Assembly: GCF_001194135.2 (NCBI RefSeq)
Contig: NC_068984.1
Coordinates: forward strand, 37,888,293-37,952,292
Source: Octopus bimaculoides
Lineage: Eukaryota
Length of the DNA: 64,000 nt
Reading direction: 5' to 3'
A program made the translations under genes and the position numbers. Every line of letters starts with the position of its first letter. Positions within the stretch are counted from its first letter, which is position 1. Of the stretch, positions 2,501 to 64,000 are shown in pieces. The notes beneath the pieces were generated by a model. It did not search any database. It worked only from the letters and a program-made list of their open reading frames with translations, and was not told the DNA's origin.

Positions 2501-3344
2501 CTGAAAGTTATGAGGAAACAAAGTCGATGGGGTGGGGCACAGTTGTATAGGTATGCTGCAATTGACACTGGTGCAATGAAAAGCCAAGATGACCTTTAAA
2601 CGATTTGAACTTTGCATAGTGATTTACCAAACTAGTAACAAATGGAGTATATAATTCGACATTCTGTTGTTATATAACTGTCCTTGATGTCTCTAAATAT
2701 ATTGCCTTTGACGAGGAACAATTGAAAATATTTGTAGATGAGGTATAATCAATTAAATATATTTTATCAGAACAACGAGGCAAAGTAAATGCAAGCAATA
2801 TTCAAATTCAGTATGTTGAGAGAATATTTAAAACTGAAAAAACATTTAAGTAGGAGCTAATTCGTTAGCTAAAACGTTACTAATTAAATGCTTTAACAAA
2901 CAACGAAGTTGTGGTATTCTAAATGTAAATAACATCGCATCGAGAAAAAAAGTTTATCAAAATAATGTCATTAAAGATTGTAAAGCCATACTTTAAAAAC
3001 CCAAAATGTCAGTAAAGCCATACTTTAAAAACCCAAAATTGGAATCAATTTATAAATCTTAAATATCATTTTGCCGAATATGAATACAGCATATCTATTA
3101 TAGAGTTACATAAAGTTGATGCGCCAAACTGAAGTTGTTTCAATAACATTTGCAATACAAACGCATTTTTTCAATGACGTTAGAGTACACAGATATTTAT
3201 ATTATGAAATAAGCTAAAAGCGCTCAGTAAAAAAAATTGCATTAACATAAGTGAGTGTATCTTTGGCAAGTTCAATGAATTATCAATGAAATAGAGAAAA
3301 ATCTGAGTAATAAAAGTGATGAATTAGTGCGAGGAGACACTCAC

Positions 3345-3360
3345 CTTTGATGGTCGCCAT
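3345..3360 (-). CDS. First coding exon of unidentified divergent gene (MATIK + G)
   Basis: Minus strand reads CAAG ATG GCG ACC ATC AAA G|GTGAGT: strong start context and consensus donor, in a locally GC/CpG-richer island. Confidence 0.65.
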
Positions 3361-3423
3361 CTTGCCCTTGCACTATCTCAAAGCGAGGCACTTCCGGTAA
3401 AAGAAAAAAGTATTGGGTCTAAA
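3361..3423. promoter_or_regulatory. Bidirectional promoter / short 5' UTRs between two head-to-head ATGs
   Basis: 63 bp between opposite-strand start codons. Contains CTTCCGG (ETS/GABP-type motif). Both ATGs sit in AA(A/G)ATGGCG (YY1/TISU-like) contexts. Confidence 0.7.
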
Positions 3424-3447
3424 ATGGCGGACGCGCAAGACTTGAAG
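3424..3447 (+). CDS. PIAS: PIAS / Su(var)2-10 SUMO E3 ligase, coding exon 1 (MADAQDLK)
   Basis: ATG GCG GAC GCG CAA GAC TTG AAG|GTTTGT. Splices in phase 0 to 40144 giving [20 protein letters not shown], matching vertebrate PIAS N-termini (MADxxELK/R-xMVxSxRVSELQ). Confidence 0.9.
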
Positions 3448-5042: not shown

Positions 5043-5051
5043 GTATAGGTA

Positions 5052-5104
<53 letters not shown>

Positions 5105-5110
5105 ATGTGT
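5043..5110. repeat. (TG)n/(TA)n compound microsatellite
   Basis: Direct inspection; adjacent to a 10-N gap. Confidence 0.9.
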
Positions 5111-6854
5111 AAGATATTTTGGTGTGGAGGGATTTAACAGCCACTCAAATGGTTTGTAGATAATGTTGACATAGATTCCCACTTTCATCTTATTATTACC
5201 TTGTCGATGTATTGATGATATAAATACGTTTCTTGCAATTTCGAATCATTAAAATCAAAATCAATTTGGCTGACCTTCCATTCGTTTTCTTCTATTTTCC
5301 AGTTGTCAGTGTTTTTATTTCTTTTATCTTGTTACTTTCGGTTTCTTAAAACCTTTGTGAAGTGAGAAAAATAGAACAAAATAGATCGAGTTCCAGTAAT
5401 TTTTGACATGGGTGATTGATCACTATATGTTATTCGCATTATAAAACAACACTCACTTTGTAGACATTATCCTTTTTTATTTTTATTCTAGTTAAAATAA
5501 TGCAGACTTTTTTCCTAAAGAATTAGCTAACTTTTCTTAATCTGATGAGACATCGATATATATTATAATTGTTGTTAACTGAACTTTGATTACTCTCTTC
5601 TTTTTTTTCGCCTCTGTGACGACAGCTAGTACTAAATGATCAATCAAGTGATCGTGATATGTTTGTTTGTCGATTAATAATATTTTCATTGAAGTTGCAC
5701 ACAGAGCAGGATATGAATCGCTTCATTAAATCATTGTCATCAATTATGACATTATCTATTAATGTTATGTACCTTGATACTTGTTGTTTATAGTGTTCCT
5801 TAAGTTTTTATTTAATTATTTAAGTAAATTAAGGAGGGTTTGATGCCGTTACAGTGCATCGCTTCTGCTCATTGTGCTTTACATTGGTCATGGATATTGT
5901 TTCGCGATTAGCTTTATAAAAGACAATCCTTTCACTTTGTCGCAGACATCAATATCAGTTAAGTGATTAAAAAACAAAAACAAATCAAAACAACTTTCAA
6001 GACTCTCTCTCCCTTATTCTTGGATGGGGCAGAGGAAGCTAGGATAGAATAAAATACTATTTTCTTAATGTGATTGGGTACTTAAATATTTGCATTGTTG
6101 TAGTGTTTTTGTAAAACAGAAACAAAAATATTAAAATAATAATGTCATTGTTTAAGATTTGACCTAATTTGTGTGAAGCAATTTTTATTAGTCTGGCTGC
6201 TGTCTTTCTCTTCACACACACATATAAACATGTGTAAATCTAAAATAGAACTGAACTTTAAAAAATATTAGTTATAGAAAGGTTGCTTGAATCTGTTTAA
6301 GAAAAAGATCTAGGTTGTAAATTGCTGAATCAGTGTTTTTCGACCTTCCCAAGAGACAAGCAATTAATTTAGATTGTATTCCAGTTTCTGAATTCATAAC
6401 TGGTCGAAGATGAGTTGATTGGTTGAGGAATAAGTATATTCCACTGTTGTGACAAATTCAGTTAGCAGGACTTATGATAGACTGTTGTTCTCTCCCTATG
6501 GATTGTTGATGTAATTAACCACTCTTAGGCTTTATCTCTAATTGTAAAATGCGCATTCTTTTCCACTGAGTTATGTAACTTATGTAGCCTTAATCTTTTC
6601 TTTCTGTCTAGAACACACCATCTAATGTGCCATTGCTAAAGAATGTTCATGATATTAAGCTTTCTTTTTGATTTTTGTTTTTAATCAGAATTTTTATTTT
6701 GTTAGCTCCAGCACAATTTTAGAAACTTTTTTCCTGCTTCTAAAGTTATCAGGCATTATATACCAAACATTAATTTTGAGGACAATTTTTTTTTTTTTAG
6801 ACATAAAATTGTTTCACTTAATGATTTTGCAAAGAAGGGGGCTTGGAAATACCA

Positions 6855-10766: not shown

Positions 10767-11369
10767 AACAAACGAATGAACGAGACAGAATCTAATATAC
10801 CTGGCTTGCTTAGTATCTTAGGATCCTGTGTTCAGATTATCCTGAGGTCAACTTTGCCTTTAATCTCTTTGTTATTAATAAAATATATTTCCAAAACACT
10901 GGTGTAATCAAGTGTATACTGCTTTTAAAAAGCATTTTTTAATTTCTTGGTGGAAAAGAACCAGTAAATCAAGTATAAGAATTGTATAAGAAATTCTTCA
11001 TTGGAGCTATTTTACTTTGCTTGGTTTATTGATACCTTTGTGGGTGACATGAATGCCAAATAGTATAGGCTATTTCTGTACCTGTGTATGTACATGTGTG
11101 ACCTAGTCATTACAGTGTTGCATTCACATTCATGAGATTGTGGGTTTCATTCTTAGGCCAAATAGTGCATTGTGTTTTGAGTAAAACACGTCATTTCATG
11201 TTGCTCATTTTGACATCTGACTTGTAGCACACAATATACCTGTACAGGCAATGTCAATTTGATGAGGAGAGTGAGAGGTTATGTGCAGCAGAAACTATAA
11301 ATAAATCACTTGTGTAGGTTGTTTAGCAAGAAATTTTAGAACCATCTTTCCCAAACTCAAGAGAACACC

Positions 11370-11409
<40 letters not shown>

Positions 11410-11954
11410 ATGTATGTATACACATACACACACACATATACATACAGCCACTCATAAAAAGCAAAATTATCAAAGTCATATATTAACTGTTTGTGGGATT
11501 TTCCAGTCATGGAAGCTTTGTGCAGTGCATGTGTATAAGCAAACCAGTTTGAAACACTGGGTTACATAAATCAGCCAATGAAATCTTTTCTCTGCATTAA
11601 CTTCAGTGCATGTGTGTGAATCAATCATTATATACTAACAGAAGATTATGTCTTCTATTAATTTGCCATAGTAAATATTTTGCCTGCAATTTCATCATAA
11701 GCTAAACACATCATTGCTAAATTTACCATCATGCTAAATACATCATCAGCAAATTCATCCTCATGCTTTTATCTGGTGGACAATTACATCATTAAACATT
11801 ATAGTTTTATTTGTAGGTTTGATATGTCATATTTAATTATATCATTGATGGTTAGAGTATGTAAATATGTCGTATTTAATTATATCATTGGTGGTTAGAG
11901 TATGTATATGGAATATATTTCACAAATGTATGTGTGCATTTTTCACTGAAAAAC

Positions 11955-35900: not shown

Positions 35901-36987
35901 TTATAAAGTAAGCAAATGCAGATTTGTGATGGCAAAATTTCATAAAGAGCATATGTACCATGAAGTTCTTTCTACAGCTTTTTGACCATACTTGACAAAA
36001 AGTGACCTTAACCCATGTGACCTTACAATTAAAACATTATGGGGACATTCAAAATACCAATTTTCATAAGAAATAGTTAAAGACTCAACAAAACATGTTT
36101 CACCTGGTTTGCAATGATAGTCACACTAAATCAAGCACAGCATGGTTATATCTGCAGACAACTTCCACAAATATGAGACAGGTATGATGTCAAGGATGAC
36201 AGAAATGTGTTGTTTATTAGCATCTAATTATATAAAAGACATTTCTGTCATCATTGTGACATTTAAAACTGGTTAGATTGAAAATAGTGAAAGTTACTCA
36301 AGTTGGATGCATTTTATTTACTGAAAATACTTAAATCATGACTTTGTTTTCACTTTTGTAATTGCATTTTCTTTAAATGACATTGAAAAACTATGTTTTC
36401 CAAATTATTTCAAGATCCATACATAGGTCTGCATTTGATGAAGCCACATCTCTCCTTAGAAATGGTGACAATACCTGAAATGTTGAGAAATGAACATTTG
36501 AGTTTGTGAAAAATCTTGATGTGATAGAGCAAAATGGATTTCAGTTTTGGAATCAGCACTCCAAAATAATTAGGAAATATGTCTCTAACACTAGACAAAA
36601 AAAAAAAAAAAGAATTCTGTTCCCCAGTGCAATGTGTTTGTTGGAAGTAGTATAGTTCCTATTAAAATGTATTAATGTTCTCATATGTATGTATTTAAGC
36701 ATTGATTGCTTTAAGTAAATTTCCTAGAGTTTTTTTTCAAGTTCTTAGTAAGATTTTCATTAATCTCTTAGAGACTGAGGACTTGCTTCTTTATTTTACA
36801 CAGCCTTCACTCTCCTATCAGTCACTCCCCCACTACCATCTTTATGTTATTTTATCAACATAAACACAATCAGTTTCATGGAAAACTTATTTCAGTGAAA
36901 TTTTATATAAAGATATGTATTTTTCAGAAAGTTATCATTGCCTGCTACCAAGCCTCATATGTGCACTCATCCTACAGCTATTATGTT

Positions 36988-36989
<2 letters not shown>

Positions 36990-37038
<49 letters not shown>

Positions 37039-37149
37039 NNNNNNNNNNNNNNNNNNNNNNNNNNNNNNNNNNNNNNNNNNNNNNNNNNNNNNNNNNNNNN
37101 NNNNNNNNNNNNNNNNNNNNNNNNNNNNNNNNNNNNNNNNNNNNNNNNN

Positions 37150-37198
<49 letters not shown>
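36990..37198. repeat. (TC)n microsatellite spanning an N gap
   Basis: Direct inspection; gap 37039-37149. Confidence 0.95.
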
Positions 37199-37203
<5 letters not shown>

Positions 37204-39228
37204 TATCAGCTTTTATTATATAGAGATCCGTAAACATATATAAAACTCCGTAGAGTTACTGCTTCTTTACTTCTTCCTACCAACTACTTGTCAAGTTTGC
37301 TCTCCTACTGGAACTGCAGTTATGTGTCTGTGTGTTGCTTTTAGCATCTTTACTATCCATCTACCACTGCTTGTCAGTTTTAATGCTCCCTTTCCGACTT
37401 GGACTTTTTATGTTAACTCTCTTTGTATCCCTCTTTTGCTTTCTCTCTCTCTCTCTGATTCACACGTATCTGGAGAAATCAACCAAAAACCAACATTTAT
37501 ATCAGTTATTATTATATGGCTGTGTGTGTGTGTCTATCATTATCATCATCATTTTAATGTCCACTATTCTATACTTGCATGAGTTGGATGGAGTTTATTG
37601 AGGTAGATTTTCTATGGTCAGGTGTTTTTATCACCAACCCTCACCTGTTTCTAAGCAAGGTAATATTTCTCCTTGGCCAAACATATTCTCTAAGAATATT
37701 GAAAATGAATGATACTACTTGTGTGACAGTAACACTTATTTTACAGATATTATATGATATTAAAAGAAGGAGACAGACATTCATATACTCACAGTCACAC
37801 ACATATATGCACATATATGAGGGACTTCTTTCAATTTCCATCTATTTTCACAAAAGATAGATATTAGATATATCTAAATATGTGTAAAATATCTTCTATA
37901 ATAACTATTTCAATACACTTGTTCTTACTGACCCTTATATTATGGCCGCTACTGTACTTACATAGGTGTTAACCAAATGGTTAAGAAGTTAGCTTTGCAA
38001 CCATGAAGTCTTTAACTCAGTTCCATTGTTTTTTAGATAGACTCATATCTTGTGAATGAAACTGGGTTGACAAAATCTGTATAGAAGCCCATTTGGATTA
38101 TATCTATATCTCAGATGTACAGCTTTGTCATAAACTGTCAAGCTAATTTGACCTGTGTATTATTTTAAGGGTACACATGTCTGTGGGATGCAGTCAGTTC
38201 ACTAGTAGCTGATCCAGTTTATCAAATAACTGAATATTCATTGTAGAAACCAAAAGATCCCTCCACGTATACACACACATACACGCATGTGATTGATTTC
38301 TGCACAATTTCTGCATACCAAATTCCACTCTCAAAGTATTCAGTCCACCTCAAGTTTTCAAAGACACTTGCACAGTGGGATCAAATCCAGAATCTCTTTA
38401 TTACAAAACAAACTCTGTAACTACACAACTATGCTACATATTAAACGCTTATCAGAACAAAATTTTACGGATTGTAAGGAACTCTAGAGCTAAAACAATT
38501 TCAGTTTTTGTAGCATTAAACTAATGAGAGATAAAAGTCTTTATCCTGATGAGACAATGGTGTGTTGCAGGTCACTTTGCTTGGAAAACTATTTATTTCC
38601 TCACAGCTAGTGTTTCCCAATACAAAATCAACCTGAAGCTGTAGAAACTCATATTTAAGTATCGATCTGAACTTATTTTTATTTTGTATTCATATGAACT
38701 GAAGTATTGGTAATTCTTTTGCAATCCTTTATTTTTTCAATGTTACACCAATTAGTTAAGCAATAACTATTTGTATTTGTTGTTTGTGTTATCCATTTTT
38801 CTTTTTAGCTGTATAGTGTTTGGTTGATTAAACTGTATGATTTAAAGGCCATTAGTTCAAACTATTCCCCCCCACCTATTTCTGGAACATATTATCATAC
38901 TTGGCTCAGTAAACATTATTGAAAATACATAGCATGTCTAATTTATTTGGTATCCCTAAAAAACTTAATTCAGAGAACAAAAGAAAGAGTCAATAATCAT
39001 ATACTTGCTCTTTTCACCACTCCCTCCATTCAATTGTTGATTGATTGTATGTATGCATCTGATATTTAAGATGAATGTTTCACCTTCATAAACTCATTAC
39101 TCTACCATTCAGTAATGATATTAAATTTATATTCAAACAAACTACTTAATTTATTTACAAACCAGTGGGAACCATTTCTCATTTATACATGTGAAATTAT
39201 TTGACAGATGGCACAAATATATATATGC

Positions 39229-39260
<32 letters not shown>

Positions 39261-39546: not shown

Positions 39547-40143
39547 TATATATATATATATGTACGTGTGTCTTTGTGTCCGTGTTTGTACCCCCACCAT
39601 CGCTTGACAACCAATGTTGGTGTGTTTATGTCCCCAAAACTTATCAGTTCACCAAAAGAGACCGATAGAATAAGTTCTGGGGTCGATTTCTTCAACTAAA
39701 AGTGGTGCTCCAGCATGGCCACAGTCAAATAACTGAGACATGTAAAAGAGTATAATATATATATATATTTTTTCAAAATTCTAATTTCTGGAAAAGTAGT
39801 TCATTTACCATTTTGATACCAAATTTTTATTGAAATACATTGTATTTGTTTCAATTAATTTTAGAAATAATGAAGAACTGAGTAAAATAACTTTGTTGTT
39901 ACTGTACTGGTTTCTGTGAATCAAATTTTTGATGGAAAGTTTTAATTTAAAACACTTTAAAAGTGAAAGTTTGTATCATAGGACTATGGGTGATCTCAGG
40001 CAGGTTAGTATCATGAGAGTTAATGGGCTAAATGCTTTGATATGAAGCCTTCGTTTGGTACCTGACATTTTTATTTAAACTATTCTACTAATTCTCATGA
40101 AATTCATTTTACTTACATGTATTTTCATTTCTATTTCCTTTAG

Positions 40144-40304
40144 CACATGATTATGAGCTTCCGTGTGTCAGAACTTCAAGTCTTACTTGGTTTTGCTGGT
40201 AAAAGTAAAAGTGGTCGCAAACAAGAACTTCTACAAAGAGCTTTAGGTTTGGTATCCCGAGTCTGTTCAATACCTGTTCAAATAAAAATTCGTGAACTAT
40301 ACAG
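40144..40304 (+). CDS. PIAS: PIAS coding exon 2, SAP domain ([53 protein letters not shown])
   Basis: Closely matches the PIAS SAP signature [30 protein letters not shown]...[19 protein letters not shown] acceptor, AG|GTATGT donor, phase 0 to phase 2. Confidence 0.97.
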
Positions 40305-42969
40305 GTATGTTGTTACATTTGTATCTGTTAAACACTACTATGTGCTTGCTTCACTTATATTTGTAGTCAGTTTATTATTATACTTCATTCTAAAATTCAC
40401 TCCTATATTCTTTTGATTATAGAATTTCATTCATCTTCAAAATGATTTAATCGTTATGTTTCTGTATGCATATTTTCACCTGCATGTCATAACTTGATGG
40501 TAATGTGATTGTTTTAAATATAGGCTGAATTATTAGTGACTAATTCACTTTTTAATTCAGAATTGTTAAAGGTGAAATTATAAATTGCTTGATTTTTCAA
40601 TTTGCTAAGTAAGCTCTGGTTTATAAAAGAGCTGCTTATGTCTGCATAAACAAGGCACCCAGACAGCCAGTCAGTATCTAAGTCAGTGGTCTTATCACTT
40701 TTTCTGTACTGGGTTCTTGAACAAGCAACTTCACTTTTGTATGTATCACAGAATATTATAATTCACTGCTAACAACAGTGAAAAAGTGATGAGTGTTTTG
40801 CCAGTGAATAGTATTACAATTCCTCTCATGGATATGGTCAGAAGAGATGTTGAGTCCTATTGGTCTCCTCCATATATCCAACTGTACCATGGCATTAGGT
40901 ACAGTCCCTGACTATCAAATTTGGGGCTGGGGTGGGCTCATTTTTCCCTCTTGGTTTTTGATATATAAAGTAATAAAAAATATTGGAATTTCCTTAAATG
41001 ATATTTATTTCTCGTTTTTCTTGTTTTAGATTAATTGTTAAAAAAAAAAAAAATTGTCTCTTTTTTTTCTTTCTGACAAAACTTTGTCTATTTACAGTTA
41101 AATATTCTGCACCATCTCAGTAAAAGACATTTAAATATTTTCATTTTCCATTGTATATATATTTAGTTGCATTTCATTTAAATTATATATGAAAGATATT
41201 TCAGCAACTCTGAAATTAAATATAGCTGAAGAAATTATTAAAAATATAGAACACCAATGTTTTTGTAGAATGTAGTGTCTAGAGATGCTTTATAATTGGT
41301 TAGAAATAATAATCAATAAATACAAAGTTCCATGTTAATTAAAATAAATATAGAAAATTTTTACAACCATTATAGTCATATTGATTACTAGCTTCAAAAT
41401 GGATAGCTTTCCTAGTTGATTAAATTATCAATTGTATATTCTAATCTTGTGAAAGTAATAAGCAACAGTATACTTACATTGTCTGATATTTTATTTTGGG
41501 TCAAGAAGTTATGTCTAGTAGTTAATCTAAAAATGGAAAATTATTTTACACAGTGATTTATGCTAACTTAAAGTCAAGATATTTTTATATCTTAAAATTT
41601 AAAAGCCTCTTTCTCGACATAATTATTTTTTCATTGGTTTTAATTTTATATTGGTGCTGCAGGTACCAGTTTTCAGTTCATCATATAGGTTTGAGTGAAA
41701 ATATATTTATTAATGTATAATGTAGTAATATATGTTTATACAGTATTGAACTTTGAAATCGAAAGTTCAGCTTCTGTTGGCTTCCAAGATATTTCTTTTT
41801 TATACCTTGAAGTATTTTATTTTATTTTCTTAAATGTTATATATTCACTTTTCTATGCTAATACAGTTTGGCAGCATTTTCAAAACCATAGTTTGTCCTT
41901 TATTTAAGAGCATAATTCTATGTTTGTCATAGGTTGTGTGGCTATGATCTAAGAATTATCTTAATCATGCATGGTCAGTATGTAACATGCATCCCTCTAA
42001 AATCTGAAGTGTGTGTGTTAATTCATATTTAGAAGAATCTCTTGAATTTACAAAAGACCTTATGTAGTTCTCATTTTCCCTAAAAGTGAAGTTCATGCAC
42101 ACACAAGCGAAAAAAGCAATGTACATACACGCACATACACACACATTCTTATTTGGCAAATTCAAAATCTGTTTATTAAATTTGGAATGTACTTTTACAA
42201 TACTGTGAACATAAATTAGCTCGCTGCATGAAAATTAATGTGTTTATTTCTCTTGAAAAGGAGGGAAAAATAGAAACTGCTTTTGGAAAAAATGTCTCTT
42301 TTCAATTAACAAATTATTCATGTTAATATAAGACTTCTTATAGCAACTACTCTATAATGCTTTGCTTGTGAACATTCTTGCTAAAGTGAACTAACTTCAT
42401 ATCTACCAGGTATAATAGGCATGTCTCAGGAGTAATTGTGTGAAATTCTCAAATTATTTTAAAATACTTCAATTACTTTGATCCCTTATTTATAGGCAGA
42501 ATATTGAAGATGGTTCATAAATTTGGGGAGCTGGCCTGCATACATATTTTAAGATATTTAATTTGATGTTCCATTATTCTGCAAGTCATGAATAACAGGG
42601 TATGAACTTTTCATACCCTGTTATTAAAAATAATTCATAAAAATAATTCCATTGAAAAGTAAACCAGAATTATCCATAAAATATTGTTCCTTTAACCAAG
42701 GAGATACACTAGTTAAAATTCTGAGTTAAATATATTATACAAGCATGACTGTGTTGTTAACAAGCTCATTTTGCAATTGTGTCTTTGGGCTCTGTCCCAC
42801 TGTGCTGCACCTTGGGCAAGTGTGTTCTATAACCCTAGGCTGATCAGTGCCTTGAAGGTGAAAGGGTGAATTTGATAGACAGAAACTGTGTGGAAGACAA
42901 TCGTGTGTGTGTGTGTGTGTATACACCACTCTTGGGGTAGTTTGCATTAGGAAGGGCATTCAGCTGTAG

Positions 42970-46400: not shown

Positions 46401-47031
46401 TTTTTATCTACTCACATCTAATCCTCTGTTGTTTGGTTTTCAAATCTATTACCTCTGTCTTGGGATCATGTAACTTATCTGAAGTTAGTGACTAAAAGTT
46501 CAAAGATTATCTGGTCTTGGATTCTATATGCAAGATGCCAGTTCAAGGATTTTTACAAGGAAAATATTTGCAAATATTTTTGTTCAGATTGGTGGTTCAG
46601 TTAATGCATTAAAATATAACATCTTATTTAGAACAAAAACTTTTGTGGGTATATAAACTTGTGGGGTCTTCTAATCTCAAGAGACTAAATGATTTAGAAC
46701 CAAACAACAGTTTGTAAAATACATGTAGAAAAGTCAAAATTTAGTCTACTAAGTTGAAATTAGTAATAAACATTGGTTTAAGAATTGTTATTTCTACAGG
46801 GTGTCCTGAAAATCTAAGAGACATTGATGTAAATGATGGTTAACTTTGTTATGTGTAAAGTATATTGTCCATAATGAAAAAAAACCCCCAAAAAGCTTTG
46901 CTTAGTGAGATGGATCAGCATTTTCAGGACAGCCTATAGTTTAATAAATAATTGGCAAACATAATTCAACCCCTCCTTTCCTCTATCTATCTCTTTTCCC
47001 TCCTTTTTCTTTCTTTTTTTTATTATTCAAG

Positions 47032-47088
47032 ACAACTTCCTATTTTGACTGATTATTCATCTGTTGGGAACTCCATCTCTGGTGTGAG
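47032..47088 (+). CDS. PIAS: Candidate alternative 57-nt PIAS cassette exon (R-QLPILTDYSSVGNSISGV-R)
   Basis: Long pyrimidine tract 46971-47020, AAG acceptor, GAG|GTAAGA donor. Length 57, phase 2/2 matches intron 2, no stop codon. Confidence 0.55.
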
Positions 47089-49019
47089 GTAAGATATTTG
47101 ACTGATATATATGAATGTATGTGCAGATGTGTGGATGTGTGTGTTTGTGTATGTAATGGATGTTTGTATGTATGCATGTATGTACATTCATACATATAAA
47201 ATATATGTGTGTGTATGTGTGTATTTATTATTCAGGTAACTGTACTGTTTGTGTCTATATATTAGAAGATATGTGGAGGTTGATAGTAAAAACAAACTTG
47301 AATCACTGAAGTCTTCAAATGGCCTATATTAAAAACAATCATTTTGCTACCAAACTATTTAGATGTAAAGATTTATGTTTGCAAAAACTTGTACTTTATT
47401 TTCCATGTCATATCCTGCCTCTATATTTTCATTGCTTGTTTTGAATTTGTATAATCTTTTCAAGTAATGTTAATGATATATTTGTAGTGAGTTGTGGTCA
47501 CTAATGTGTATTTCATTAAACATGAACTTGAATTTAGAACAAAGCACTTTGATTTCAAATTTATTTCTAATTGATTGTACACTAACACACTTCTTGTCAA
47601 AGGAAGCTTCAGTTATTAAGAATTGAATTTCACTTACATGCTTTTGGCTGCTTCAAATTGTTACTGTTTTGCTAATGTACTTATTACTTTTGCATGCAAT
47701 ATGAACACATTCTAACTTAACTTTGCATGCCATAGTATGTGCCCTTTGAAAATTTAAATTCTTTACAAAAAAAGAGAAAAAGGTTTCTTCCATTCATATA
47801 GATGTACTAACCACATTTTTCGTTGTTGTTCTTTACAACACACATCACATACATACATATATATACATATATGCAGAAACACATACATATGAAATGTAAA
47901 ACCAAGACATAGACCCCCAAGCTGCGTCGCTGACTACCTGTCAAGGAGTAACTAACTGTAACTTTGCACAAGAATTGATACAGGGTAGAGGGGATTCTAG
48001 GTCTGCTGCATAGGACAACCTCTCTCGTCCTGGTGGCAGAACATTATATTATGGTATGTATCTAGGCCACATTGTAAAACAAACCTAACAAAGTTAACTA
48101 TGTGTACTAGATGGCATGGTGTTATGGCCAGCGGTGAGATGCAGTATGATCCATCCAAACCATGCCAGTATGTATATGTGGGTGGGGTAAAAATTTAAAA
48201 TAAAGTGGTGGCAGCAGTGGTGGTATATTCAGCATACAAGACAATAATTTCTCTATTATAGTTTCAATTCTCAGAAATATATATTTATATTTTGTTTCAA
48301 ACTTTTTGCTGTCTCCCTGCATGAAATACTACCTTCCCGTCTAATTAAGAATTCATTTTTGTAACATCTCAGCAATCTTGAATGTCACGACTCCATATAC
48401 TTTATTTTGGTATTTTGGATGTTATCTTTACTTTCAAATATATACTGATATAAACTATGGTTGCCTATTCTTCTGACTACTACCACTCAGTTGTATAAAT
48501 GGTTCCATAGAAAGAGTTCTCTGCTGTCAAAGATTAAATCCATACTTTTTACAATCTGAGACAAAAAAAGAAAAAAAATCCAGCATCAAACATTTTAAGT
48601 CTGTTTACTCTGCTAAAGTGGGATTTAGATTTGCATATCCTCTATTTTGAATACATCATAGTTCCCATTACGAGGAAGTGTTTTATGAAATGAGTATCTT
48701 TCGTATTGCCAACCCTTTCAGTCACCTGTTATTACATGTTGATATACAGTGTACTTCTAAAACTGGCATACATACCTAAAGCACCTTAATTCAAAAGTAA
48801 AAGATCTGTTTCATGAATAATGTCGGTAATATATAGTAAATTGATTATTAGTATGTAGTTATCCTTTATTTTTTACTTGTTTAAGTCAGTGGAAGGACAT
48901 CAGACAAATTAACGACAGTTCTTATTATTTTTAAGTTTGGTACTTTCTATCAACCCTTTTTGCTGAGCTGTTAATTTATTGGAACATAAACAAACTAACA
49001 GCAGTTGTCCAGCACTGGT

Positions 49020-63510: not shown

Positions 63511-63617
63511 ACGCCGATTTCCTAGCAGAAATACTAGCCCAAACCAAAATGCCACGTCTCAACCCAGTTCTGACTCTGGTTCGTCATCAAGCAATTTTCA
63601 GGGGAAACAAAGTTCTT
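63511..63617 (+). CDS. PIAS: PIAS coding exon 3 (R-RRFPSRNTSPNQNATSQPSSDSGSSSSNFQGKQSS)
   Basis: TTACTTTCAG acceptor and T|GTAAGT donor. AG+A completes Arg so the splice gives ELYRRRFP, as in vertebrate PIAS1/3. Confidence 0.93.
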
Positions 63618-64000
63618 GTAAGTTAAAATTTTAAACGTTTATTATCCTCAGGTTTTTCTACTTATTCTTCCTGGAGAGCTTGGAAGAACTCTTTTGCAGG
63701 TATAATGGTAATAGTATTTAATTTATTTTTTATCTTCTCTAGAGTTGACAATTTCAGCCTTACCAATTGAAAAGATTGAAGTGCACTGGGTTATTATATA
63801 TAAAATATTTTATTTGGTAAAAAAAAAAAAACTCTGAAAGCTATAAATTAGTACATTATAATGAATTAATTATACTAATTTCACATGATACAAGCTACAT
63901 CTGTATTTTTATGCTAAGTTTAGTATGAATTGATTAGGTTAGTAACTGACCTTTTTTATTTCTAATTATACTGCATTCCAATCAACACTCTTCAATCATC

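What the first reader, a model, noticed from the sequence alone, without database searches (positions are those of the whole stretch)
47032..47088. Hidden 57-nt in-frame cassette exon right after the PIAS SAP domain
A ~50-nt pyrimidine tract, an AAG acceptor and a GAG|GTAAGA donor bound exactly 57 nt. The segment enters and exits in phase 2, has no stop, and regenerates the junction Arg. Inclusion gives ...IRELY-R-QLPILTDYSSVGNSISGV-RRRFP..., inserting 19 aa between the SAP domain and the basic RRRFP motif. The non-YAG acceptor is consistent with regulated inclusion. Such an isoform could alter nuclear targeting or chromatin/partner binding of a SUMO ligase whose fly orthologue acts in piRNA-guided silencing (functional part is inference).
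Basis: partly seen in the sequence, partly recalled or inferred. Interest (0 to 1): 0.7.

Follow-up and report, generated by a model that had tools for sequence, protein, structure and literature searches.

The report
Known alternative exon in octopus PIAS
The 57-base segment is a real, in-frame optional exon of the octopus PIAS SUMO-ligase gene, but public RefSeq and GenBank isoform models of three Octopus species already contain it, so it is an ordinary annotated splice variant whose function is untested.

Summary
Window 47032-47088 is 57 nt long. A 66-nt pyrimidine tract and an AAG acceptor precede it, and GAG|GTAAGA follows it. It is open in the frame set by PIAS exon 2 (40144-40304) and exon 3 (63511-63617), and it inserts QLPILTDYSSVGNSISGV after ...IRELYR.

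From sequence alone this is only suggestive. Six signal-passing acceptor/donor pairs lie in the 23-kb intron, and about 0.2-0.4 frame-compatible ones are expected by chance.

The decisive evidence is annotation. The window matches Octopus sinensis PIAS2. RefSeq isoforms X1 (XP_029634640.1) and X3 (XP_029634642.1) carry exactly this 19-aa insert; X2 and X4 (XP_036358436.1) skip it. O. bimaculoides X1/X3 and four O. vulgaris models carry the identical peptide.

So the cassette exon is real but not hidden: it is already annotated.

The insert sits right after helix 4 of the N-terminal SAP four-helix bundle. It is predicted disordered and moves the conserved RRRFP 19 residues away. Any functional consequence is untested.

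Other molluscs vary at the same codon (QIF... extension of exon 3), and mammalian PIAS3L carries a 35-aa insert between SAP and PINIT.

Novelty: already known. Interest is low.

The parts
3424..3447 (+). PIAS coding exon 1 (ATG GCG GAC GCG CAA GAC TTG AAG = MADAQDLK), donor GTTTGT
   Evidence: Regex scan and sequence. Identical to residues 1-8 of XP_036358436.1.
40144..40304 (+). PIAS exon 2 (SAP domain, HMIMSF...IRELY + AG of the split Arg codon), phase-2 donor CAG|GTATGT
   Evidence: 100% identical to residues 9-61 of P0033. Pfam SAP PF02037.
46940..47029 (+). AG-free zone upstream of the acceptor. The only yUnAy branch-point candidate at a workable distance is TTAAT at 46941-46945 (A at 46944, 87 nt from the AG).
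   Evidence: Branch-point use is inferred, not shown.
46964..47029 (+). Long polypyrimidine tract (at least 90% C/T), degenerate TCTTTTTCCT-like repeats
47030..47031 (+). Acceptor AG (context cAAG|A; non-YAG, weak)
47032..47088 (+). 57-nt alternative cassette exon, phase 2 in and out, encoding (R)QLPILTDYSSVGNSISGV(R)
   Evidence: The peptide is present in RefSeq and GenBank isoforms of three Octopus species. GC is 0.40 against 0.28-0.30 in the flanks. It is unique in the window.
47089..47094 (+). Donor GTAAGA (GAG|GTAAGA; 7 contiguous consensus positions, -2 to +5)
47105..47224 (+). TG/TGTA-rich microsatellite-like intron sequence just downstream, containing one TGCATG at 47173-47178
   Evidence: A regulatory role is speculative: the motif occurs about once per 1.8 kb per strand.
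63511..63617 (+). PIAS exon 3 (A|CGC CGA TTT CCT... = RRRFPSRNTSP...GKQSS + T), acceptor tttcag, donor GTAAGT
   Evidence: Identical to P0033 residues 62-98.

Best explanation
Window 47032-47088 is a genuine, frame-preserving alternative (cassette) exon of the single Octopus PIAS-type SP-RING SUMO E3 ligase gene, annotated 'PIAS2'. The window matches Octopus sinensis/vulgaris.

Inclusion adds 19 residues (QLPILTDYSSVGNSISGV) after Arg62. That is immediately after helix 4 of the N-terminal SAP four-helix bundle and before the conserved basic RRRFP. Skipping gives the canonical metazoan ...RELYRRRFP....

Shown:
- the exon geometry;
- inclusion and skipping isoform models in three Octopus species;
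- 19/19 residue identity across those species;
- the position of the insert relative to the solved PIAS1 N-terminal domain.

Inferred:
- The exon is recognised by exon definition, through a strong donor and a very long pyrimidine tract with a distant branch point.
- The weak AAG acceptor and the short exon, between 6.7-kb and 16.4-kb introns, make inclusion optional and regulatable.
- At protein level the insert lengthens the disordered SAP-to-PINIT linker and moves the RRRFP patch away from the DNA-binding bundle. This could tune DNA/chromatin tethering or docking of partners on the linker.
For: Geometry and frame:
- establish the exon boundaries and reading frame.
- It is the only signal-passing, frame-compatible pseudo-exon in the 23-kb intron.
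- It has an exon-like GC of 0.40 against 0.28-0.30 in the flanks, and a 91-nt AG-free zone upstream.
- The pyrimidine tract is rare in the window.

Gene identity:
- XP_036358436.1 (O. sinensis PIAS2 X4) is 100% identical to exons 1-3 of the window.

Isoform models (alignment, lists):
- The exact insert is present in O. sinensis X1 (718 aa) and X3 (690 aa), O. bimaculoides X1 (719 aa) and X3 (691 aa), and O. vulgaris CAI9720736/39/40/43.
- It is absent from X2 and X4 of both RefSeq species and from two O. vulgaris models.
- The lengths 671/690/699/718 are the four combinations of this 19-aa cassette and a second 28-aa cassette.

Conservation:
- Non-coding sequence around exon 2 in a related octopus read set is only 89% identical to the window.
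- The cassette peptide is invariant in the three annotated species.

Structure:
- PDB 1V66 (PIAS1 residues 1-65) aligns without gaps to residues 1-65 of the skip form.
- The AlphaFold2 model of X3 has helices 4-13, 16-26, 34-48 and 54-63. Residues 63-131, which include the cassette, have pLDDT below 50.
Against: - I could not see primary RNA evidence. No junction reads were available, and no transcript-derived fragment with the insert appeared in the protein search with the inclusion peptide.
- XP_ records are computational models.
- The O. vulgaris annotation may have used Octopus proteins as hints, so the three annotations are not fully independent.
- The acceptor is a weak AAG.
- Sequence-only statistics are not significant.
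- The species of the 89%-identical read set is unknown, so the neutral baseline for O. bimaculoides was not measured.
- The AlphaFold2 model has low confidence in the N-terminal region (pLDDT 51-61 in the SAP bundle).
- Nothing tests the functional part.
Confidence: 0.9

Rival explanations
1. Chance pseudo-exon that gene-prediction pipelines picked up and passed between Octopus annotations by protein homology, so it is never or hardly ever spliced in.
For: - The sequence-only expectation is 0.2-0.4 such segments per intron.
- The acceptor is a weak AAG.
- No transcript-derived fragment with the insert was retrieved.
- The annotations may share evidence.
Against: - Inclusion and skipping models exist in two RefSeq species, in all four combinations with a second cassette.
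- By my knowledge of NCBI's Gnomon pipeline, alternative variants are reported only with transcript or RNA-seq alignment support. I did not check this here.
- The peptide is 19/19 identical in O. bimaculoides, although octopus intron sequence can differ by about 11%.
- GC is exon-like, and the AG-free zone plus long pyrimidine tract form a coherent 3' splice-site architecture.
Confidence: 0.06
2. Origin hypothesis A. The cassette is the detached descendant of an old molluscan 5' extension of exon 3. That extension is alternative in scallop models and is present in every gastropod model seen here (Q-I-F/Y-x-S/T-N...). It would have become a free-standing exon when intron sequence was inserted between it and the RRRFP core.
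For: - The codon and phase are the same, and the first bases are similar: A|CAA ATA TTT in Patella and Lottia, G|CAA ATT TTT in Haliotis, A|CAA CTT CCT in Octopus.
- The gastropod extension ends in AG|A. This is an internal acceptor that would give RELYRRRF, just as the Octopus cassette ends in AG.
- Scallop RefSeq isoforms exist with and without QIFSSS.
- Octopus exon 3 itself has no such extension.
Against: - Similarity beyond Q-(I/L) is nil.
- The Octopus peptide is twice as long.
- No intermediate (squid, nautilus) could be examined.
- A short match at a splice junction is easily convergent.
Confidence: 0.2
3. Origin hypothesis B. The cassette arose by lineage-specific exonisation of intronic low-complexity or repeat-derived sequence in octopods.
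For: - The exon sits between a CT-rich low-complexity tract and a TG/TGTA microsatellite.
- The intron is very large, 23 kb against 0.2-3.3 kb in gastropods.
- No homologue of the peptide was found outside Octopus.
Against: - The 57 nt are unique within the 64-kb window and show no repeat copies.
- The exon is already fixed and identical in three species.
- The absence of cephalopod data outside Octopus in the searchable collections makes 'Octopus-only' untested.
Confidence: 0.6

Closest known systems
RefSeq Octopus sinensis PIAS2 isoforms X1 (XP_029634640.1) and X3 (XP_029634642.1), with orthologous O. bimaculoides X1/X3 (XP_014783344.1, XP_014783360.1) and O. vulgaris CAI9720736.1 and related models
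   Same: They contain exactly RQLPILTDYSSVGNSISGV between RELY and RRRFP. This is the very feature under study.
   Different: Nothing differs. The finding re-discovers an annotated exon. Those records are computational models with no functional study.
Mammalian PIAS3 versus PIAS3L splice variants
   Same: An optional peptide segment between the SAP domain and the PINIT domain of a PIAS ligase. PIAS3L has 35 additional residues there (PMC10999569).
   Different: The lineage, length (35 aa against 19 aa) and sequence all differ. Whether the insertion point is the same codon was not tested. There is no evidence of common origin.
Molluscan exon-3 5' extension or tandem acceptor at the same junction (Patella, Lottia, Haliotis, Littorina, Mytilus, Ostrea; alternative in Mizuhopecten RefSeq isoforms)
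   Same: The same phase-2 codon after RELY(R/N). The inserted peptide starts Q-(I/L). The result is a variable spacer before RRR(F/Y).
   Different: In gastropods the 27-30 nt are contiguous with exon 3 (alternative 3' splice site geometry) and encode 6-10 residues. In Octopus the segment is a separate exon 16.4 kb upstream of exon 3 and encodes 19 residues.
Human PIAS1 N-terminal domain, PDB 1V66 (residues 1-65)
   Same: The Octopus skip isoform aligns to residues 1-65 without gaps (E=1e-21). This places the insertion after residue 62, three residues before the end of the solved domain.
   Different: No inserted form has been solved. The effect on DNA or partner binding is unknown.

Membership tests
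Frame-preserving cassette exon (alternative splicing) | Bounded by AG acceptor and GT donor, with a polypyrimidine tract | tested here: met
   cAAG|ACAACT...GTGAG|GTAAGA, with a 66-nt tract of at least 90% pyrimidine. The acceptor is a weak non-YAG.
Frame-preserving cassette exon (alternative splicing) | Length a multiple of 3, open in the frame of the flanking exons | tested here: met
   57 nt, phase 2 in and out, no stop.
Frame-preserving cassette exon (alternative splicing) | Both inclusion and skipping products exist | tested here: met
   Met at the level of public isoform models. X1 and X3 include it; X2 and X4 skip it in O. sinensis and O. bimaculoides; both forms occur in O. vulgaris.
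Frame-preserving cassette exon (alternative splicing) | Junction-spanning RNA reads or cDNA, and tissue pattern | not testable with these tools
   No RNA-seq access. The peptide search retrieved no transcript fragment with the insert.
Frame-preserving cassette exon (alternative splicing) | Conserved in related species above the intron background | tested here: inconclusive
   The peptide is 19/19 identical in O. bimaculoides and O. vulgaris. Intron near exon 2 is 89% identical in an unnamed related octopus. The orthologous cassette DNA could not be fetched.
PIAS/Siz SP-RING SUMO E3 ligases | N-terminal SAP domain, PINIT domain and SP-RING (zf-MIZ) | tested here: met
   Precomputed Pfam hits PF02037, PF14324 and PF02891 on P0033 and P0177. 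1V66 match. Only the SAP part lies inside the window.
PIAS/Siz SP-RING SUMO E3 ligases | SUMO ligase activity | not testable with these tools
   Needs biochemistry.
PIAS3L-type insertion | Optional segment between SAP and PINIT | tested here: met
   The location is met: the cassette lies after residue 62, and the ordered (PINIT-containing) region of the model begins around residue 132. PIAS3L description from PMC10999569.
PIAS3L-type insertion | Homologous sequence or the same intron position as the mammalian insert | not tested
   No PIAS3L sequence was aligned here.
Molluscan exon-3 5' extension (QIF...) | Contiguous with exon 3 (tandem acceptors) | tested here: not met
   The Octopus segment is 16,422 nt upstream of exon 3 and has its own donor. 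Octopus exon 3 has no extension.
Molluscan exon-3 5' extension (QIF...) | Same codon and phase, and a recognisably similar peptide | tested here: inconclusive
   The codon and phase are the same and the peptide starts Q-(I/L), but nothing beyond that is similar.
Repeat/TE-derived exonisation | Exon sequence present as dispersed copies | tested here: not met
   Self-BLAST shows the 57 nt are unique in the 64-kb window; only the TG microsatellite flank recurs. A genome-wide test was not possible.

The most novel reading that the evidence does not exclude
The boundary between the SAP bundle and the RRRFP linker would be an ancient, regulated splice hot spot of lophotrochozoan PIAS genes. On this reading the Octopus 57-nt cassette is the detached, expanded descendant of the molluscan Q-I/L-F/Y exon-3 extension. 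Its inclusion would be tissue-specific, for example neural, driven by the CU-rich tract upstream and the UG-rich/UGCAUG sequence downstream. It would tune chromatin tethering of the only PIAS ligase in the animal, a functional parallel to vertebrate PIAS3/PIAS3L.
Probability: 0.15. Interest if true: 0.35.

Novelty: already known. Interest (0 to 1): 0.12.

Why it matters
As it stands it matters little. The exon is already part of the public gene models of three Octopus species, so the scan has re-found annotation. That is a useful positive control: a tool-less reader located a real 57-nt exon inside a 23-kb intron.

The residual interest is modest. Octopus appears to have one PIAS-type ligase, and it is modelled with two independent cassettes and SAP-less alternative N-termini. 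The position of this cassette, at the end of the DNA-binding SAP bundle, coincides with a junction that also varies in gastropods, bivalves, a chiton and a brachiopod. In mammals PIAS3L carries an insert between SAP and PINIT.

If inclusion proved tissue-specific and changed chromatin or partner binding, it would be a small, tractable example of splicing-based diversification of a single-copy SUMO ligase. None of that is shown.

Tried and rejected
1. Protein search with the 109-aa inclusion peptide. It returned only short ORF fragments of exon 2 reading into the intron, or spliced fragments from other phyla. None carried the insert. It also missed the full-length Octopus isoforms that contain the query 100%, so the word index is biased towards short proteins and the negative result is uninformative.

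2. Patella caerulea P0005. Its RELYR-QIFASNAH-RRRF looked like a homologous cassette, but tblastn and the DNA show the extra 27 nt are contiguous with exon 3. Haliotis and Lottia are the same.

3. O. bimaculoides DNA for the orthologous cassette. X3 is not on record. For X1 the gene range is 112 kb, so no DNA was returned. DNA-level conservation therefore stays untested.

4. The species of the 89%-identical Logan contigs (SRR11869384/390/391) could not be identified. A paper search for the accession found nothing.

5. TGCATG (Rbfox-type motif) lies 85 nt downstream of the donor. The motif occurs 72 times in the window on both strands together, so one local copy is not meaningful.

6. Repeat or TE origin. 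Self-BLAST finds no second copy of the 57 nt.

7. The second cassette (SLNSVK...) and the alternative N-termini (MAPKKSTV..., MNYPTHGQ...) were searched for in the window. They are absent and lie downstream of base 64000.

8. No paper in the held library links PIAS, octopus and alternative splicing in a relevant way.

9. The third large protein search was deliberately not spent. It would have used a chimeric query of intronic ORFs to fish for orthologous genomic contigs. Intronic ORFs were not called as genes on the related contigs, so the chance of success was judged below 10%, and the verdict would not change.

Full report
**1. Observation**

Exon 2 of a PIAS-type gene ends at 40304 (...ATT CGT GAA CTA TAC AG|gtatgt). 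Exon 3 begins at 63511 (tttcag|A CGC CGA TTT CCT). Between them, 47032-47088 is exactly 57 nt. Before it lies ...ttattattcAAG and after it GAG|GTAAGA.

Splicing it in keeps the frame and has no stop. It regenerates Arg (AG|A) at both junctions and yields ...IRELY-R-QLPILTDYSSVGNSISGV-RRRFP....

The upstream pyrimidine tract (46964-47029) is at least 90% C/T. It is one of only three such tracts on the + strand of the window, with none on the - strand. There is no AG from 46940 to 47029.

**2. Is it more than chance?**

The intron contains 653 AG...GT pairs of 30-300 nt that are in frame and open, so frame alone means nothing.

Two filters were then applied: at least 80% pyrimidines in the 25 nt before the AG, and a donor matching MAG|GTRAGT at 7 or more of 9 positions. 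These leave 12 acceptors, 34 donors and 6 pairs in the intron. Four of the six use this acceptor, and only this pair is frame-compatible.

In the whole window, 1 of 21 (+ strand, the target itself) and 1 of 15 (- strand) such pairs are frame-compatible. About 0.2-0.4 would therefore be expected in this intron. From sequence alone the candidate is the best in the intron but not statistically compelling.

Supporting details:
- GC is 0.40, close to exons 2 and 3 (0.38 and 0.45), against 0.28-0.30 in the flanks.
- The 57 nt are unique in the window. The flanks are low-complexity: CT-rich repeats upstream and a TG/TGTA microsatellite downstream.

**3. What the gene is**

A full scan of protein representatives with exon 2 found a 671-aa protein, P0033, that is 100% identical. 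It is XP_036358436.1, 'E3 SUMO-protein ligase PIAS2 isoform X4 [Octopus sinensis]'.

Its first 98 residues equal exon 1 (3424-3447, MADAQDLK) plus exon 2 plus exon 3 of the window, with the 57 nt skipped. Pfam SAP, PINIT and zf-MIZ are on record for it. The window therefore holds the 5' part of the Octopus sinensis/vulgaris PIAS gene, with introns of 36.7 kb and 23.2 kb.

**4. Decisive evidence**

Searching with P0033 returned isoform X3 of the same gene (P0177, XP_029634642.1, 690 aa, which is 671 + 19). The alignment shows the only difference is RQLPILTDYSSVGNSISGV inserted between RELY and RRRFP. That is exactly the predicted peptide.

Cluster listing and a motif scan give the following.

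| Species | Cassette present | Cassette absent |
|---|---|---|
| O. sinensis | X1 (718 aa), X3 (690 aa) | X2 (699 aa), X4 (671 aa) |
| O. bimaculoides | X1 (719 aa), X3 (691 aa) | X2 (700 aa), X4 (672 aa) |
| O. vulgaris | CAI9720736, CAI9720739, CAI9720740, CAI9720743 | P0178, P0179 |

The four O. sinensis lengths are the four combinations of this 19-aa cassette with a second, 28-aa cassette (SLNSVK...GMQGK) after exon 3. The peptide is 19/19 identical in all three species.

So the exon is real, is modelled as alternative, and is already public. 'Hidden' applies only to a reader without annotation.

Caveats:
- These are computational models.
- I could not inspect the RNA-seq support.
- The three annotations may share evidence.

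**5. Conservation background**

Three Logan contigs from one read-set series (SRR11869384/390/391; species not identified) cover exon 2 and 2 kb of flanking intron. They are 89% identical to the window. Congeneric introns can therefore differ by about 11%.

If O. bimaculoides is similarly distant, about 6 substitutions would be expected in 57 neutral bases. An unchanged peptide would then indicate constraint. That is a conditional inference, because O. bimaculoides DNA could not be fetched.

**6. How it most likely works**

*RNA level (inferred).* The donor pairs with U1 at seven contiguous positions (-2 to +5). The 3' splice site combines a very long pyrimidine tract, a 91-nt AG-free zone and a probable distant branch point (TTAAT at 46941-46945). 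Its AAG acceptor is poor.

A 57-nt exon between 6.7-kb and 16.4-kb introns must be recognised by exon definition. With a weak acceptor it is the kind of exon whose inclusion depends on trans-acting factors.

CU-rich tracts and UG-rich or UGCAUG elements are classical binding sites of PTB-, CELF- and Rbfox-type regulators (general knowledge). The single TGCATG at 47173 is not statistically meaningful here.

*Protein level.* The skip form aligns without gaps to the solved N-terminal domain of human PIAS1 (PDB 1V66, residues 1-65). The cassette therefore enters after residue 62, three residues before the end of that domain.

An AlphaFold2 model of X3 (34-sequence alignment) gives helices 4-13, 16-26, 34-48 and 54-63. 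Residues 63-131 have pLDDT below 50. Confidence in the SAP bundle itself is only moderate (pLDDT 51-61).

The cassette thus lengthens the disordered SAP-PINIT linker right at the C-cap of helix 4. It moves the conserved basic RRRFP 19 residues away. Effects on DNA/chromatin tethering or partner docking are plausible but untested. LPIL followed by TDYSS loosely fits a hydrophobic-core-plus-Ser/acidic pattern, but such matches are common, and I give it no weight.

**7. Comparison with what is known**

(a) The feature itself is in RefSeq and GenBank (section 4 above).

(b) Mammalian PIAS3L differs from PIAS3 by 35 extra residues between SAP and PINIT (PMC10999569). This is the closest functional analogue. 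Homology was not tested.

(c) The same codon is variable across lophotrochozoans:

| Taxon | Sequence at the junction |
|---|---|
| Patella | RELYR-QIFASNAH-RRRF |
| Lottia | QIFATNANN |
| Haliotis | QIFSSNLH |
| Littorina | QIYASNH |
| Mytilus / Ostrea | N-QIF(S/G)SN-RRK |
| Chiton | KKINDQLFLSA-RRRF |
| Scallop (RefSeq isoforms) | RELYNQIFSSSRRK, RELYNRRK and RELYKRK |
| Lingula | RRRFP and RRFP |

In Patella, Haliotis and Lottia the extra 27-30 nt are contiguous with exon 3. They end in AG|A, an internal acceptor that would give the canonical RELYRRR(F/Y). This is tandem-acceptor geometry, not a cassette.

Octopus exon 3 lacks any such extension. Both kinds of insert begin (A/G)|CAA (A/C)T., that is R-Q-(I/L). 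Whether the Octopus cassette descends from that extension or arose by exonisation in a greatly expanded intron cannot be decided with the data reachable here. No cephalopod outside Octopus was present in the searchable collections.

(d) The fly orthologue Su(var)2-10 does link piRNA-guided recognition to chromatin silencing (bioRxiv 10.1101/533091). Nothing connects that role to this region.

**8. Verdict**

- Observation: confirmed.
- Structural interpretation: supported.
- Novelty: none, because the exon is already annotated.
- Functional claims: untested.
- Interest: low. The residual curiosity is the recurrent variability of this junction in molluscs.

Noticed in passing
window 3340-3447 (minus-strand ATGGCGACCATCAAAG|gtgagt at about 3344-3362; PIAS ATG at 3424): A gene with the Oxidored_q6 domain (NDUFS7-like) starts head-to-head about 60-80 bp from PIAS exon 1. 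The same divergent pairing is annotated in O. bimaculoides, Patella caerulea and Haliotis rufescens, which suggests a conserved bidirectional promoter across molluscs.
   Followed up: partly
outside the window (downstream of 64000); proteins P0296, P0301, P0290, P0299: A second independent cassette of 28 aa (SLNSVKSELIRNLAVHPLNLKSSIGMQGK) follows exon 3. Two alternative N-termini lack the SAP domain (MAPKKSTV..., MNYPTHGQ...). None of them is encoded in the window.
   Followed up: partly
L004 15655-15700 (Patella), L005 4770-4810 (Haliotis), L006 2095-2140 (Lottia): Gastropod PIAS exon 3 carries a 27-30-nt 5' extension (QIF..N..) that ends in an internal AG|A acceptor. Use of that acceptor would restore RELYRRR(F/Y). 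Scallop RefSeq isoforms show three alternative forms at this junction, and Lingula isoforms differ by one Arg (NAGNAG-like).
   Followed up: partly
window 36978-37043 and 37145-37214 (+ strand): Two further pyrimidine tracts of at least 50 nt and at least 90% C/T lie in intron 1, about 3 kb upstream of exon 2. All three such tracts in the window are on the transcribed strand and none on the other strand. I did not examine whether they mark untranslated alternative exons.
   Followed up: no
window 47105-47224 and many other sites (e.g. 5049-5112, 11369-11440, 39218-39260): TG/TGTA-rich microsatellite-like sequence recurs throughout the window. One block begins 17 nt after the cassette donor and contains a single TGCATG at 47173-47178.
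   Followed up: partly
L001-L003 (Logan SRR11869390/391/384) against window 39829-42139: Genomic contigs from an unidentified related octopus are 89% identical across exon 2 and its flanking intron. The exon-2 ORF reads through into the intron and was called as an 88-aa 'protein' (P0001).
   Followed up: partly
P0032 (2177 aa): The top hit of the representative search is a 2177-aa protein with 28 matched stretches to the SAP exon, which looks like a tandem array of SAP-like repeats. It was not examined.
   Followed up: no
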